From positions 124,001 through 188,000 of the IMG/VR virus record IMGVR_UViG_3300028920_000022: a stretch of DNA of 64,000 nt, one strand, 5' to 3'. Below the pieces are notes generated by a model that was given only the letters and a program-made list of their open reading frames with translations, ran no database searches and was not told the origin of the DNA. The position numbers and the translations under genes were made by a program. Positions 17,494 to 50,576 of this stretch are shown here, in pieces; position 1 is the stretch's first letter, and every line of letters starts with the position of its first letter.

Positions 17494-17565
17494 AACATTT
17501 ATGCCGCAAATTACCATCGCAGACGTGACTTTATTCCTGTAGCAACTGCTACTACACGACATTAC

Positions 17566-17594
17566 TTGACACTAGCCACCGGATCCTGTATACA
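17566..17594 (+). promoter_or_regulatory. sigma70-like promoter
   Basis: TTGACA-17-TATACA. Confidence 0.55.
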
Positions 17595-17605
17595 GGAAAA
17601 CAAAA

Positions 17606-18388
17606 ATGAGACCTAAACAAAAAGATCAAAGAAGAAAAACCTCAAGACAGTTTGTTAATGTGCCGGAGGGGGTTTCCATTGTTGTTATGGGAGACGTCCA
17701 CGAACATGAGGAACAGTTCTACGCCACTCTGAAAGAGGTTCGTCCTCGTGAAGATATGTGGCTTGTATCATTGGGAGATATTTACGATAAGGGTTTTGGA
17801 ATTAAATCCGCTGAACGTATTACTGATGAGTTAATTAAACTCCAAAATAAAAACGTTTGTTATGCGGTTCGTGGTAATCATGAACTTAAACTCATTCGTA
17901 AAGCAAGAAAAACCCCCAAACTTACTCCTCAATTAAAATGGTGGTCAAACCAACCACTTGTACTTACATTTAATTTCAAAACCAGAAATACGATAACCGT
18001 ATTACACGCGGGTGTAACTCCCAACATGACCGAAGGAGATTTGGGGCATGGTGTAGAAGTTGTTTATGTTCGAGATGTGGACGAAGATGGACAAATGATT
18101 CCTTTGGTGTGGAAAGATATTAATGGAGTTCAAACTCTAGTTAAATCTAAAGAGGGTGGAAACAATTGGCATGATGTTTACGATGGAAGGTTCGGTTATA
18201 TTGTGGCTGGACATGCTGCCCAACGAGATGGAGAAGCTAAATTCTTTAATTATTCATGTAATATTGATTCTGATATTTATCAAAGCGGTAAATTAACTTC
18301 CGTTGTTTTCAATGACGAGGGTAAGTTGGTTAAAAAAATTATTATGGAGGGGATTGCGCGCAAACCCGAATTAAATATTGCTTATTGA
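17606..18388 (+). CDS. calcineurin-like metallophosphoesterase
   Basis: GDVHEH, GDIYDKG, RGNHE, HAG, GH. Confidence 0.9.
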   Translation: MRPKQKDQRRKTSRQFVNVPEGVSIVVMGDVHEHEEQFYATLKEVRPREDMWLVSLGDIYDKGFGIKSAERITDELIKLQNKNVCYAVRGNHELKLIRKARKTPKLTPQLKWWSNQPLVLTFNFKTRNTITVLHAGVTPNMTEGDLGHGVEVVYVRDVDEDGQMIPLVWKDINGVQTLVKSKEGGNNWHDVYDGRFGYIVAGHAAQRDGEAKFFNYSCNIDSDIYQSGKLTSVVFNDEGKLVKKIIMEGIARKPELNIAY

Positions 18389-18711
18389 TGCTTTTTGTTA
18401 TTGAATATTCAGCGAAGAAACCGTATTTCTTTTTCAAACAGGTAACTAACCTACAAAAAACTGTAGGAAGAGCTGCATTAATTGCAAAAGATCCTACAGA
18501 CTGCGAAGCTCGAATTGTAAAATTATTGCAACAAGAAGACGAATCTTTTATTCAAAATACCGGGTTACAGATTGTACATGTGTCCAGCGGAAAAGAATAT
18601 GCTGCAGGTTTTGAACACTTTATGCTGAGTTTCTTATCTTCTTTTGATGAAATTATTAAAAAAATGCGAAAAACTTACAACGAAGAAGTAATCAAAGATA
18701 TAATTACCTGA
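18385..18711 (+). CDS. hypothetical protein with C-terminal tag
   Basis: Ends YNEEVIKDIIT. Confidence 0.7.
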   Translation: MMLFVIEYSAKKPYFFFKQVTNLQKTVGRAALIAKDPTDCEARIVKLLQQEDESFIQNTGLQIVHVSSGKEYAAGFEHFMLSFLSSFDEIIKKMRKTYNEEVIKDIIT

Positions 18712-18717
18712 GGAAAT

Positions 18718-19134
18718 ATGCTTTTAAACCAAGCACAATATAAAGAACATGTTAAAATTTTAAATAAAATTGCTGAAGAAATAACAGATTTAATTACTAA
18801 AACTAAAAAAGAATGGGACTCAAAAGATTCCGAGGAGAAGGATAGTCTCCAGCGCGGGATTCATATGGGAAAATTGGGAGCACTGAACACCTGTTTACAG
18901 CTCTTTAGGAATAAGGCTGACGGGGCTTATAAAATTGAGATGGACGCAGCCGACCTCCAGGTCCTAAATCAAATTAAACAAATAGAGAACCAGTGTCTCG
19001 TTTTGTCAGACATCGCTCAGAAAACCACCGACACCTCTGCCCAAAACCTTATTTTAGATCAGGTTTCTTTATTCGAAGCCGTGATAAAGGAATTGAAATT
19101 AATTCTTCGACAAGTTGGTACAAAGAATGCTTAA
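18718..19134 (+). CDS. helical hypothetical protein
   Basis: 138-aa ORF, SD GAGG. Confidence 0.7.
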   Translation: MLLNQAQYKEHVKILNKIAEEITDLITKTKKEWDSKDSEEKDSLQRGIHMGKLGALNTCLQLFRNKADGAYKIEMDAADLQVLNQIKQIENQCLVLSDIAQKTTDTSAQNLILDQVSLFEAVIKELKLILRQVGTKNA

Positions 19135-19169
19135 CGTTTTCGTCGAGTTTCGGTTATGAAATTAATAAT

Positions 19170-19294
19170 CGCGCGGGCGCGCGGAAATACTTACGGAAGG
19201 ACTTCCGCGGAAGACAATACGTACTTACGTAATATAGATCTTATACTTAAGTATATTAAGTAGTATACGTATAGACACAACAGTTTACTGTTGT
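19170..19294. other. palindrome-dense intergenic element (candidate origin / protein-binding array)
   Basis: CGCGCG-GG-CGCGCG, CTTCCGCGGAAG, TACGTA-CT-TACGTA, AGATCT, TATACTTAAGTATA, TATACGTATA, ACAACAGT-TT-ACTGTTGT within 125 bp. Confidence 0.6.
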
Positions 19295-19327
19295 TAGCAG
19301 TTTTTGGATACAGCAAATTTGTTCAGT

Positions 19328-19642
19328 ATGTCCGACCCAGAATTGCTCCCAGATATTGACGAATACCTCGAAAGTATTCACGAAAATGCCCCAGTCGATG
19401 CTACAGGATTAACCGAATTAATATATAAAGTTCGTGCTTCTACTGGTTTAAGTAAAGATATTTGTACCATTTTGATTTCTTTATTCTTTCAAGAGATTCG
19501 AAATCAGTTATTAAGAGGTAATAGCGTTTATTTGAAAAGGTTCGGAAAGTTCCAGATGAATAAAGATCCTACAAAAGTTTTCCCAAAATTCAAAACTTCA
19601 AAATGGTTGAGGCATAAATTAAATGGTAGAGATCCAGGATAA
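19328..19642 (+). CDS. HU/IHF-like DNA-binding protein
   Basis: ELIYKVRASTGLSKD...FFQEIRNQLLRGNSVYLKRFGKF...PKFKTSKWLR. Confidence 0.75.
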   Translation: MSDPELLPDIDEYLESIHENAPVDATGLTELIYKVRASTGLSKDICTILISLFFQEIRNQLLRGNSVYLKRFGKFQMNKDPTKVFPKFKTSKWLRHKLNGRDPG

Positions 19643-19892
19643 GGATATTACTAACGCAACTTCTGCTGTTTTAATTAATTGCGTGGTAACGTTTAAAATG
19701 CTGAAGATCAACAAACCTTTAGCAATTAAATGTATGCAAGAGTTGGTAAAACGTAGAGAAGCTGGAGAAGAATTAGATTATGAGAACATAATCGATCAGA
19801 AATTAAAAGAATGGCAGGCAAAGGTTGTTAAACCAAGATCCTTGAAAACCCCTCAAGATTTTGCTAAGTTGTTCGCAAAAGACAATGACTGA
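19623..19892 (+). CDS. hypothetical protein
   Basis: 89-aa ORF in operon. Confidence 0.6.
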   Translation: MVEIQDKDITNATSAVLINCVVTFKMLKINKPLAIKCMQELVKRREAGEELDYENIIDQKLKEWQAKVVKPRSLKTPQDFAKLFAKDND

Positions 19893-21093
19893 ATTATTAG
19901 TACAAAAATATCTGCGATCTGGTAAAACCCTTGATGATCTTTTTCAAGAGCATGGGGTGAAGTCTTATATTTCGAATGGGAAAATAGGATTAAATTATAG
20001 TCAGCTGGAAGCTAAAGGATCTGATCCGTTGGCATGCGAATGTCGCGGATTGATCCTGGAAGAGGGAAGCTTTAATATAATTGCTTGCCCTATGTTCCGA
20101 TTTTTTAATATGGAACAGAAAGAAGTGGCTGCAAAGATCGACTGGAACACTGCCGGCTATTACGAAAAATTGGACGGAAGTTGTGTAAACGTTTATAATT
20201 ACAAAGGAAAATGGCAATGTGCTACTCGGGGGCGTCCAGAAGCTGACGGAAATATTGATGGAGGAGAGTTAAAGTTCTCTGATTTGGTGGATGCCACGAT
20301 CCGATTTATGAGGTTAGGTAAGAATCTCCATGAAGCAATGGAACGGCTGACGTCTTCAAATAGTATCGTAGGACTTTCTGAGAGAACGCTCAGCTTCGAG
20401 TTGACCTCTCCAGTGAACCGTATAGTCTGTAGGTACGAAACTTATTATATGACGCTCCTAGCAATTAAAAATAACAAGACCCTAAAAGAAGAGTCCCCAG
20501 AGCTGTGGGCTGAACGCCTTGGTGGGGCTTTTAAAACTCCGAAAAAATATTCTTTTAATAATATAAATCATTTGATTCAGGTAATAAAAGAATGGAGTCC
20601 TGAAGAACATGAAGGAATTGTTGTAAAAGACGCTAATTATAACCGAATAAAAGTAAAAAGCCCTCAATATTTAGCTTACAATCATTTGAGAGATTCGTTA
20701 TCTACGTCTTTGCGGGGATGTGTTGAGGTTCTTTTGTTGGGTAAGGATGACGATGTGATCCCAATGATGCCTGAGATCATTGCTAGGAGAATAACTTTAT
20801 TAAAACCGTTGGTAGCGGAAGTTTTCAGGCGTACTGAAAAAGATTATGCAGAATTGAAGGGAATAAATGATATGAAGACATATGCTTTGGCGGTCAAAGA
20901 TCGGCTTTGGCCGGCGGCCTTATTTGCATTAAAGCGAAACAAAACCCCAGATTTAAGAACGTTTTCTTTAGGGAGGATGGTTGGTTCAAAAATTCCTTCC
21001 AATGCGACTGCAAACATGTTAGAGTTGTGCCGCCAGGTGGATCCTGCTACCGTTGATGGTTTGAAATCTTTGGTGATAGAGCCTGAAGAATGA
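19885..21093 (+). CDS. T4 Rnl1-like RNA ligase
   Basis: ECRGLIL, FRFFN, motif I EKLDGS, FEL, EGIVV, KVKS..Y. Confidence 0.9.
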   Translation: MTELLVQKYLRSGKTLDDLFQEHGVKSYISNGKIGLNYSQLEAKGSDPLACECRGLILEEGSFNIIACPMFRFFNMEQKEVAAKIDWNTAGYYEKLDGSCVNVYNYKGKWQCATRGRPEADGNIDGGELKFSDLVDATIRFMRLGKNLHEAMERLTSSNSIVGLSERTLSFELTSPVNRIVCRYETYYMTLLAIKNNKTLKEESPELWAERLGGAFKTPKKYSFNNINHLIQVIKEWSPEEHEGIVVKDANYNRIKVKSPQYLAYNHLRDSLSTSLRGCVEVLLLGKDDDVIPMMPEIIARRITLLKPLVAEVFRRTEKDYAELKGINDMKTYALAVKDRLWPAALFALKRNKTPDLRTFSLGRMVGSKIPSNATANMLELCRQVDPATVDGLKSLVIEPEE

Positions 21094-21509
21094 CAGTACA
21101 AATTTCTCCTAGATTTCTTGAAGAGAACAATTATAAAATAAAAATACGAACACATATTATTGATAATTTCAAAAAAGATGGGGTATTTCATAATAATTTT
21201 GGGGTTAAAAAGAAGGCTGATCCACACTGGGTACACATTCCTCCATTTCAAATTGATCGTGCGGGAAATGCTTTACCTTACGGAAAAACAGGTGATCATT
21301 CCATCCTAGTTTCCGAGGTTTTTGATATTGTTGAGCTAGATTTAAGATCAGTGGCTGAGTCGTCGTACAATCTAAATAATAGAAACGAAGTTACGGTTAA
21401 TTTAGTAATAGAAAGTCCGGACGGAATTCATGTCACACAGGTGGGGATGGCATCTCCGGCAGATGATACGCCATTATTCAACAATTCTAACACATTTTTC
21501 CGCACCTAA
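21090..21509 (+). CDS. hypothetical protein
   Basis: ATGA-coupled ORF. Confidence 0.65.
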   Translation: MTVQISPRFLEENNYKIKIRTHIIDNFKKDGVFHNNFGVKKKADPHWVHIPPFQIDRAGNALPYGKTGDHSILVSEVFDIVELDLRSVAESSYNLNNRNEVTVNLVIESPDGIHVTQVGMASPADDTPLFNNSNTFFRT

Positions 21510-49397: not shown

Positions 49398-50576
49398 ATG
49401 AACTTCGATTTGAAAAAACATACGATATTTTTGACACTAGCAGGTTCTAGGGCTTACGGTTTTGCCTCTCCAGATAGTGATTGGGATTATCGTGGGGTAG
49501 CCATTCCTCCACTGGATACCTATATTGGGATCAAAGACCGGTTTGAACAATCTACCGATCAGAAAACTAGACATTTGTGGAAGAATTATCCGGGTGTTGT
49601 TGAGCCAGAAGCAGATATGCAGGTATATGAATTAACTAAATTCGTGCGTTTAGCTACTCAATGCAATCCTTCTATTATTGAAATATTGTTTACCGACCCC
49701 TCTACTCATTTAATTAAGCATCCGGTGATGGATCGATTGCTGGATAATAACAGAATGTTTCTCTCAAAGCAAGCCAAAGATCGGTTCTGTGGGTATGCGT
49801 TTTCCCAACTAAAAAGAATTCAACGTCATAAAAAATGGCTAGACAATCCTCCCACCAAGTGCCCGGAAAGAAAAGATTTCGGTTTGCCAGAGAAGAAAAT
49901 TATTCCTTTAGATCAAATTGGTGCAGCTGACGCTTTAATTCAAAGAGATTTGGATACCTTTATGGTGGAACAAACCGATCTACCTGAGCATACTAAAATA
50001 GCATTCAAGAACGAATTGCACAAGATTCTGAGAGCTACTTGGTTGGCTATCAACGGTTCTGTACCTTACCCTGTAGATGAATTTGATGACGATGCTCAGT
50101 GGAATAGTACGGAGGAAGCTTTACGGGACATGGTTTCTCGGTACGAGGGTTTCAGCGAAAACTTTTTAGAAATTCTTGGAAAAGAAAAGAAATATCGCAG
50201 AGCTAAACAAGAATGGGATCAATATCAACATTGGGTAAAGAATCGCAATCCCGACCGTGCTAAATTGGAAAGAAAATTCCAGTATGATTGTAAACACGCC
50301 ACACATTTATACAGGCTCATAAAGATGGCGAGAGAAATATTAGAAACCGGCGAAGTGAAGGTATTACGCCCTGATGCCGAAGAATTAAAAGCAATTCGCA
50401 ATGGTGCTTTAACTTATGAACAGGTAGTAGAATTTGCAGAAAAAGAGGACGCTGCTCTTGTCGAGGTTGCCAGGAAATCCAACTTACCTAAACACCCCGA
50501 TGTAAATAAAATACATCAAATCACTTACGAAATGATTTTGGAATTTAATGGGTACTTCGAAAAACACACAATCTAA
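49398..50576 (+). CDS. Pol-beta superfamily nucleotidyltransferase (YcgL/RlaP-like)
   Basis: GSRAYGFASPDSDWDYRGV, CNPSIIEIL, YDCKHATHLYRL. Confidence 0.9.
   Translation: MNFDLKKHTIFLTLAGSRAYGFASPDSDWDYRGVAIPPLDTYIGIKDRFEQSTDQKTRHLWKNYPGVVEPEADMQVYELTKFVRLATQCNPSIIEILFTDPSTHLIKHPVMDRLLDNNRMFLSKQAKDRFCGYAFSQLKRIQRHKKWLDNPPTKCPERKDFGLPEKKIIPLDQIGAADALIQRDLDTFMVEQTDLPEHTKIAFKNELHKILRATWLAINGSVPYPVDEFDDDAQWNSTEEALRDMVSRYEGFSENFLEILGKEKKYRRAKQEWDQYQHWVKNRNPDRAKLERKFQYDCKHATHLYRLIKMAREILETGEVKVLRPDAEELKAIRNGALTYEQVVEFAEKEDAALVEVARKSNLPKHPDVNKIHQITYEMILEFNGYFEKHTI

What the first reader, a model, noticed from the sequence alone, without database searches (positions are those of the whole stretch)
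19170..19294. Intergenic string of seven palindromes beside an HU-like gene
Seen within 125 bp of one of the longest non-coding gaps: CGCGCG-GG-CGCGCG (19170-83), CTTCCGCGGAAG (19202-13), TACGTA-CT-TACGTA (19218-31), AGATCT, TATACTTAAGTATA (19242-55), TATACGTATA (19264-73), ACAACAGT-TT-ACTGTTGT (19277-94). It grades from GC-rich to AT-rich with much purine-pyrimidine alternation, and I saw nothing comparable elsewhere in the window. Inference: replication origin, packaging/resolution site or cruciform-forming protein-binding platform.
Basis: partly seen in the sequence, partly recalled or inferred. Interest (0 to 1): 0.6.

Follow-up and report, generated by a model that had tools for sequence, protein, structure and literature searches.

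The report
Palindrome-packed control spacer before phage HU gene
The string of seven short palindromes is real and is the densest in this 459-kb phage genome, but it is most likely the control region in front of a conserved HU-like/RNA-ligase gene block, not a replication origin or packaging site.

Summary
An eighth inverted repeat, CGGAAG-GA-CTTCCG at 19194-19207, overlaps the second. The window belongs to a 458,729-bp phage contig whose ends overlap. Seven separate inverted-repeat centres in 125 bp is the genome maximum: the next best place has 4, and 150 Markov-simulated genomes reached only 3-5. The palindromes arise because a few short words are locally repeated head to head. The same spacer (138-683 bp) precedes the HU-like gene in eight related phage contigs. 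Those spacers share several of the words, but mostly as direct repeats, so the seven-palindrome string is peculiar to this phage. Cumulative GC skew turns at 49.4 kb and 412.7 kb, not at 143.2 kb, and a 700-bp gap with iteron-like repeats sits at the skew minimum. The helicase gene and a weak terminase-like match lie far away. My best reading, at moderate confidence, is a promoter/operator-type control region with sites for dimeric DNA-binding proteins. A structured leader RNA is the main rival. It is an ordinary kind of feature in an extreme form. No expression or binding data exist.

The parts
18718..19134 (+). Upstream ORF, 138 aa, no known family. It is conserved next to the spacer in relatives.
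   Evidence: ORF list; no Pfam or PHROG hit; tblastn hits in L100, L086, L090, L093, L112, L003; atlas search uninformative
19142..19147 (+). GTCGAG word just after the upstream stop codon. It is conserved at the same place in five lineages and is enriched between genes across the genome.
   Evidence: TGTCGAG occurs in 11 gaps against 1.3 expected. 17 of 79 GTCGAG copies lie in the 9% non-coding DNA, usually 26-72 nt before a start codon. Present in the spacers of L100, L086, L090, L005.
19170..19183 (.). GC-rich inverted repeat CGCGCG-GG-CGCGCG
   Evidence: a similar GCGCCCGCGC element occurs in the L005 spacer
19182..19213 (.). CGGAA word array: direct copies at 19182, 19194 and 19208 (spacing 12 and 14) plus an inverted copy at 19202-07. 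Together they make CGGAAG-GA-CTTCCG (19194-207) and CTTCCGCGGAAG (19202-13).
   Evidence: the homologous block with 3-4 direct CGGAA copies at 12-14-bp spacing is in L093, L112, L003
19218..19231 (.). TACGTA-CT-TACGTA. With the third TACGTA at 19266 it forms the only 3-copy cluster of this word in the genome.
19236..19241 (.). AGATCT, inside an ATAGATCT block shared with relatives
19242..19255 (.). 14-bp perfect palindrome TATACTTAAGTATA. It is part of a unique cluster of five TACTTA/TAAGTA words (19188-19262).
19264..19273 (.). 10-bp perfect palindrome TATACGTATA
19277..19294 (.). ACAACAGT-TT-ACTGTTGT. Its ACAGT word recurs in the spacers of L100 (4 copies), L086 (3, direct) and L090 (1).
19296..19312 (+). 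Conserved tail AGCAGTTTTTGGATAC just before the start codon, probably the ribosome-loading part of the leader (inferred)
   Evidence: Alignment of the spacers. The word is not a genome-wide motif.
19319..19642 (+). HU/IHF-like gene. The start is TTG 19319 or ATG 19328. The protein lacks the beta-ribbon arm.
   Evidence: Pfam PF00216 E 6.5e-9. The PDB alignment to IHF-alpha/HU covers the helices and first strand, then jumps to the last strand. At the position of 19319, L100 has ATG and L086 has GTG; L090 has only the ATG that matches 19328.
19623..21093 (+). Rest of the conserved block: an 89-aa ORF and a T4 Rnl1-type RNA ligase
   Evidence: the same gene order is seen in relatives

Best explanation
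The 185-nt spacer (19135-19318) is the control region at the head of a conserved gene block: arm-less HU/IHF-like protein, an 89-aa ORF, and an Rnl1-type RNA ligase. It is built from a few 5-7-nt words: GTCGAG, CGGAA(G), TACGTA, TACTTA, TATAC, AGATCT and ACAGT. In this phage the words lie head to head and so make seven or eight perfect short inverted repeats. I read these as DNA-level binding sites for dimeric regulators (repressors or activators, possibly including the HU-like protein) that time expression of the block. Shown: the palindrome density is exceptional. The words are repeated locally and not elsewhere in the genome. The spacer and several of its words are kept in relatives. In one relative the HU-like gene starts a transcription unit. 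Inferred: that proteins bind here, which proteins they are, and that the effect is on transcription.
For: Statistics. Three word families each form a cluster that is unique or nearly unique in the 459-kb genome. The order upstream ORF, gap, HU, small ORF, RNA ligase is kept in eight related contigs. The orthologous gaps share GTCGAG, the GCGCGCGGAA..CGGAAG..CGCGGAAGA block, ATAGATCT, TATAC, ACAGT and the pre-start tail, each far above the local rate. Copy number and orientation of the words differ between lineages: direct in L086, L093, L112 and L003, inverted in the window and L100. This is the turnover expected of binding sites, not of one conserved hairpin. In L006 the gene upstream is on the other strand, so the HU-like gene must have its own promoter there. 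All palindrome arms pair by Watson-Crick only, with 0-2-nt spacers. This is the geometry of dimer sites and is poor for RNA hairpins. A 95%-identical contig from another study shows no listed difference in 19155-19207, while five fall in 19125-19154; this is weak evidence.
Against: The consensus scan found no sigma-70-like promoter on the + strand of the gap. No terminator separates the gap from the upstream genes, so read-through is possible. No regulator was identified; the neighbouring ORFs have no recognisable DNA-binding family apart from the HU-like protein. The words form no regulon elsewhere in the genome. The seven-palindrome arrangement occurs only in this phage; relatives have 0-2 such repeats in gaps of 138-364 bp. 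There are no expression or binding data.
Confidence: 0.45

Rival explanations
1. RNA-level element. The gap is transcribed as a long leader or intercistronic stretch, and its hairpins control mRNA stability, processing (RNase III/E type) or translation of the HU-like gene.
For: The sense strand of the orthologous gaps folds better than shuffles (z -1.7 to -3.9 in 8 of 9), and better than the antisense strand in 5 of 6 independent lineages. Other gaps of this genome average z -0.87 on both strands. No terminator or consensus promoter lies between the upstream ORF and the HU gene. If GTCGAG marks a promoter-proximal element, the whole string would be in the leader.
Against: In the window itself both strands fold equally (z -2.7 each), and the gap ranks only 8th of 62 gaps. 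The palindromes have no G-U pairs, and their centres are self-complementary with 0-2-nt spacers, which wastes pairs in a hairpin loop. The same words occur as direct repeats in L086 and in the L093 group, so no hairpin is conserved. There is no Rfam match.
Confidence: 0.25
2. A replication origin, perhaps a secondary one in the style of the T4 origins, where repeated words bind an initiator and the AT-rich part melts.
For: A GC-rich block lies next to 63 bp of 25% GC. CGGAA words are spaced 12-14 bp apart in the window and in the L093 group. GATC-containing words are strongly clustered in the gaps of L090, L005 and L006. An HU/IHF-like gene is adjacent.
Against: Cumulative GC skew turns at 49,414 and 412,666 and keeps rising through 143.2 kb. 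A 700-bp gap with iteron-like TTCGGTT repeats sits at the skew minimum. In the 435-kb relative the orthologous gap is not at a skew turn. No initiator-like gene is adjacent, and the DnaB-like helicase is 200 kb away. However, skew in both genomes follows gene orientation, so it cannot exclude a secondary origin.
Confidence: 0.1
3. No function for the palindromy itself. The spacer is a control region whose words turn over neutrally, and this phage happens to hold them head to head.
For: Relatives keep the words but not the palindromes. The cluster's 6-bp palindromes are neither avoided nor favoured in the genome, with ratios of 0.78-1.01.
Against: Seven perfect inverted repeats in 125 bp were never reached in 150 simulated genomes, and 0 of 2000 shuffles of the gap's own composition reached its score. 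Large perfect palindromes also occur in the gaps of L086 (20 bp), L006 (20 bp) and L100 (9+4+9).
Confidence: 0.1
4. A packaging (pac/cos) site, recombinase resolution site or telomere-resolution site.
For: Only the general resemblance of clustered palindromes to such sites.
Against: There is no single long palindrome. The only terminase-like match is weak and 87 kb away. The contig assembles as a circle, with 136 nt of overlapping ends elsewhere. No recombinase is adjacent. Termini could not be tested, because the runs are kept as contigs only.
Confidence: 0.03

Closest known systems
Phage operator/promoter regions with several dimer-binding sites (lambda OR/OL type; from general knowledge)
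   Same: Several short symmetric sites are packed into an intergenic spacer at the head of a transcription unit, and site number and orientation evolve quickly.
   Different: No repressor gene, no consensus promoter and no binding data. At least three different words are present rather than one operator family.
SPO1 TF1, a phage-encoded HU-type protein that binds preferred sites in its own genome (from general knowledge, not tested here)
   Same: A phage-encoded HU-family protein lies next to unusual DNA that could be its target.
   Different: The protein here lacks the beta-ribbon arm that HU, IHF and TF1 use to grip and bend DNA. No binding has been shown.
PeSL promoter/stem-loop cassettes of T4-type phages (PMC2839356, PMC4122927)
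   Same: Intergenic regulatory modules with stem-loops lie at the border between variable and conserved gene blocks. Gene content upstream of the spacer varies among relatives.
   Different: PeSLs are repeated many times per genome. This sequence and its words occur only once.
Iteron-type or oriC-type replication origins (from general knowledge)
   Same: Repeated words at roughly helical spacing, an AT-rich stretch, GATC clusters in some relatives, and an HU/IHF connection.
   Different: No skew turn, no adjacent initiator gene, and a better candidate elsewhere.
Protelomerase target telRL of N15-type phages (from general knowledge)
   Same: Alternating purine-pyrimidine palindromic DNA containing TATACG/CGCGCG-like cores.
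   Different: That family needs one long perfect palindrome of about 50 bp and a protelomerase gene. Here the longest perfect palindrome is 14 bp.

Membership tests
Replication origin | Turn of cumulative GC skew or strand switch at the site | tested here: not met
   Minimum at 49,414 and maximum at 412,666; skew is positive on both sides of 143.2 kb. The relative G001 shows no turn at its orthologous gap.
Replication origin | Array of iterons or initiator boxes next to an AT-rich unwinding stretch | tested here: inconclusive
   Three direct CGGAA words at 12 and 14 bp spacing, plus 63 bp of 25% GC. There are too few copies to separate this from operator sites.
Replication origin | Initiator or replisome gene adjacent | tested here: not met
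   The neighbours are a phosphoesterase, two unknown ORFs, the HU-like gene and an RNA ligase. The DnaB-like helicase is at 349.8 kb.
Intrinsic terminator | GC-rich stem-loop followed by a T run on the transcribed strand | tested here: not met
   None on the + strand. There is one weak minus-strand match at 19183-19170, within the number expected by chance.
Sigma-70-type promoter | -35 and -10 hexamers with 16-18-bp spacing on the + strand of the gap | tested here: not met
   The only match in the gap is on the minus strand (19259-19231, 9 of 12), and the count is within shuffle expectation.
Known RNA family (Rfam 15) | Covariance-model match | tested here: not met
   No match in 18500-20000 except one chance-level hit outside the gap.
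PeSL / dispersed regulatory repeat or MITE | Many copies per genome | tested here: not met
   Single copy in the 458.7-kb genome. The word clusters are unique. No match in the phage or plasmid collections.
Telomere-resolution or cos/pac site | One long perfect palindrome, or defined DNA ends at the site | tested here: inconclusive
   The longest perfect palindrome is 14 bp. DNA ends are not testable because only contigs are held.
HU/IHF family (the neighbouring gene) | Match to Bac_DNA_binding above the curated cut-off | tested here: met
   36.4 bits against a cut-off of 22.4, E 6.5e-9.
HU/IHF family (the neighbouring gene) | Beta-ribbon DNA-binding arm | tested here: not met
   The Pfam match covers profile positions 4-65 of 90. 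In the PDB alignments about 4 residues stand where the arm should be.
Operator array for dimeric regulators | Demonstrated protein binding | not testable with these tools
   Needs EMSA or footprinting.

The most novel reading that the evidence does not exclude
The palindrome string is a cruciform- or hairpin-forming platform recognised by the adjacent arm-less HU-like protein, either as structure-specific autoregulation or as a nucleation site for phage DNA organisation. Alternatively it is a secondary replication origin at the head of the HU block.
Probability: 0.12. Interest if true: 0.6.

Novelty: new member of a known kind. Interest (0 to 1): 0.3.

Why it matters
If the reading is right, this is a clearly delimited regulatory spacer in an uncultured 459-kb sediment phage. 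Its candidate binding words can be followed across a large clade of huge phages, which gives a starting point for working out how such phages time gene expression. It also flags an unusual arm-less HU-like protein as a candidate partner. It does not locate the origin or the packaging site. The origin is more likely at 48.6-49.3 kb of the genome.

Tried and rejected
1. Megablast and blastn of the region and the gap against the phage and plasmid collections gave no match. This also argues against a cloning-vector polylinker, despite the run of restriction-type sites.
2. Single-protein scans of viral contigs with the RNA ligase and the HU-like protein found no relatives. An alignment query was needed.
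3. GCAGTTTTTG as a genome-wide promoter word was rejected. It has few copies, and those are in coding DNA.
4. A sigma-54 reading of the TGGCAG..TTGA tail was rejected by eye. The GG is not conserved and the spacing is wrong (sequences).
6. Atlas look-ups of the 138-aa and 89-aa neighbours gave nothing above chance level.
8. A restriction-decoy idea was dropped. The cluster's 6-bp palindromes are not among the avoided ones.
9. A naive weighted palindrome score was dropped, because Markov genomes reach it through low-complexity runs.
10. The first attempts at two slow scripts timed out and were rewritten.

Full report
**Where the window lies.** The window is positions 124,001-188,000 of a single 458,729-bp IMG/VR virus contig with 39.5% GC. 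The contig's two ends overlap by 136 nt apart from one homopolymer indel, so the assembly closes on itself. Fragments 95-99% identical occur in wetland, marsh, salt-marsh and marine-sediment runs. The finding is at genome 143,170-143,294.

**The observation.**
- All seven palindromes are at the stated coordinates.
- An eighth inverted repeat, CGGAAG-GA-CTTCCG (19194-19207), overlaps the second one. Longer imperfect inverted repeats with 10-18-nt arms interlace the whole stretch.
- The GC-to-AT gradient is real: 0.66 falling to 0.25. So is the raised purine-pyrimidine alternation: 0.61 against 0.48, sd 0.05.
- The neighbouring gene is HU-like.

**Is it more than chance?**
- A naive arm-weighted score did not separate the site from Markov-simulated genomes. 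36 of 100 reached it, through low-complexity runs.
- Counting distinct inverted-repeat centres does separate it. The site has 7 in 125 bp, the next best place in the real genome has 4, and 150 simulated genomes gave 3-5.
- The inverted 6-mer pair score is the genome maximum, 40 against 7.1, sd 4.0.
- No dinucleotide shuffle of the gap, out of 2000, reached its score.
- As single-stranded DNA the gap folds at z -3.8. As RNA it folds at z -2.4.

**Anatomy.** The palindromes are not seven unrelated objects. Three words are locally repeated, and each cluster is unique or nearly unique in the genome:
- CGGAA(A/G): three direct copies at 19182, 19194 and 19208, plus one inverted copy.
- TACTTA/TAAGTA: five copies.
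- TACGTA: three copies.

Palindromes arise where copies abut head to head. The gap runs from the stop codon of a 138-aa ORF (19134) to the HU-like gene. That gene starts at TTG 19319 or ATG 19328. At the first position L100 has ATG and L086 has GTG, while L090 has only the second ATG.

**Relatives.**
- The Rnl1-type RNA ligase 570 bp downstream has hundreds of homologues, many of them on contigs of tens to hundreds of kb.
- In eight related contigs the gene order is the same: upstream ORF, a gap of 138-683 bp, the HU-like gene, a small ORF, then the RNA ligase.
- The gaps align in blocks:
  - GTCGAG just after the upstream stop, in five lineages.
  - A GCGCGCGGAA..CGGAAG..CGCGGAAGA block shared by the window and the L093/L112/L003 group. 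There the CGGAA words are all direct, at 12-14-bp spacing.
  - ATAGATCT, TATAC and ACAGT. ACAGT occurs four times in L100, two direct and two inverted, and three times direct in L086.
  - A GCAG(T/A)TTTTG tail before the start codon.
- Each word is far above its local rate.
- Long palindromes occur in some relatives: 20 bp in L086 and in L006, and 9+4+9 in L100. The string of seven is peculiar to the window's phage.
- In L006 the upstream gene is on the opposite strand, so there the HU-like gene begins a transcription unit.

**Origin and packaging readings.**
- Cumulative GC skew has its minimum at 49,414 and its maximum at 412,666, and it rises steadily through 143 kb.
- The minimum coincides with a 700-bp non-coding gap (genome 48,574-49,273) holding an array of TTCGGTT(G/T)C-type repeats beside a GC-rich patch. 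This is a better origin candidate.
- In a complete 435-kb relative, skew has one sign everywhere except 110-130 kb. Its orthologous gap, at 427.1-427.5 kb, is not at a turn.
- Skew in both genomes tracks gene orientation, so a secondary origin cannot be excluded.
- The DnaB-like helicase is at 349.8 kb. A weak terminase-like match is at 230.3 kb. No multi-subunit RNA polymerase or family-B DNA polymerase was found.
- No raw reads are held, so DNA termini and coverage were not testable.

**DNA level or RNA level?**
- For RNA: the sense strand of the orthologous gaps folds better than shuffles and better than the antisense strand in most lineages. The genome's other gaps show no such asymmetry. 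No + strand consensus promoter or terminator lies in the gap.
- For DNA: all arms are perfect Watson-Crick with 0-2-nt spacers. The window's two strands fold equally. The same words appear as direct repeats in relatives, so words are conserved rather than hairpins. As an RNA fold the gap ranks only 8th of 62. There is no Rfam match.
- I therefore prefer DNA-level sites for dimeric proteins in a control region (0.45) over a structured leader (0.25).

**The HU-like protein.** It matches IHF-alpha/HU over the helical body and the first strand, but has about four residues where the beta-ribbon arm should be. Whether it binds the palindromes is untested. The flanking small ORFs gave no clue.

**Verdict.** The origin and packaging readings are not supported. 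The protein-binding-platform reading is plausible in the ordinary sense of a promoter/operator-type spacer. This is a new member of a known kind and of modest interest.

Noticed in passing
outside the window: G000:C1:48574-49273 (locus L285:4575-5274): A 700-bp non-coding gap at the cumulative GC-skew minimum (49,414) and strand switch. It holds an array of TTCGGTT(G/T)C-type repeats (periods 15, 18, 33 and 51) beside a GC-rich patch. It is the best candidate for the replication origin.
   Followed up: partly
G000:C1:1-137 and 458593-458729: The contig ends overlap by 136 nt apart from a one-base homopolymer indel (CCCC vs CCC). The record labelled 'linear' is therefore a closed assembly, either circular or terminally redundant.
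   Followed up: yes
whole genome G000: Strong signs of restriction avoidance. CTCGAG occurs 0 times (expected 21), GAGCTC 0 (40), ACGCGT 0 (15) and AGGCCT 0. CGTACG occurs 8 times against 31 expected, and GGCC-containing hexamers are nearly absent. None of these sites occurs in the palindrome cluster.
   Followed up: partly
window 19142-19147 and 16 other intergenic places in G000: GTCGAG, often as TTGTCGAG, is under-represented overall (79 copies against about 128 expected), but 17 copies lie between genes. They usually sit 26-72 nt before a start codon, often after a TATAAT-like box and once right after a canonical terminator (genome 317797). It is probably a promoter-proximal or leader element of this phage clade.
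   Followed up: partly
window 19319-19642: The HU/IHF-like protein has a roughly 25-residue N-terminal extension and lacks the beta-ribbon arm. Its start codon is ambiguous between TTG 19319 and ATG 19328.
   Followed up: partly
window 19259-19160, minus strand: A promoter-like pair (TTAATA-17-TATATT, 19259-19231) is followed by a GC hairpin with a T-rich tail (19183-19160). Together they could give an antisense RNA of about 65 nt. Both matches are within chance expectation.
   Followed up: no
outside the window: G000:C1:55720-55900 and 235160-235760: Long coding tandem repeats: GGC-TAC-GGC-GAC type (Gly-Tyr-Gly-Asp) and GAA-CCC / GAA-CCA type (Glu-Pro). These are the genome's top direct-repeat scores.
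   Followed up: no
L090:2092-2263, L005:873-1236, L006:1741-2423: The orthologous gaps of three relatives are crowded with GATC-containing words: 6, 6 and 13 AGATC/GATCT copies against 0.1-1.5 expected. This suggests Dam-type methylation control or SeqA-like binding in those phages.
   Followed up: no
G001 (435,004-bp relative holding L005): GC skew has one sign along almost the whole genome, with a single reversed block at 110-130 kb. In G000 the skew extremes are very unevenly spaced, 364 kb against 95 kb. Skew in this clade therefore mainly follows gene orientation or unidirectional replication.
   Followed up: partly
window 17500-21500: Short contigs 95-99% identical to this phage occur in runs labelled wetland, marsh, salt marsh and marine sediment, from four other studies. 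The phage or close strains are therefore widespread in wet sediments.
   Followed up: partly
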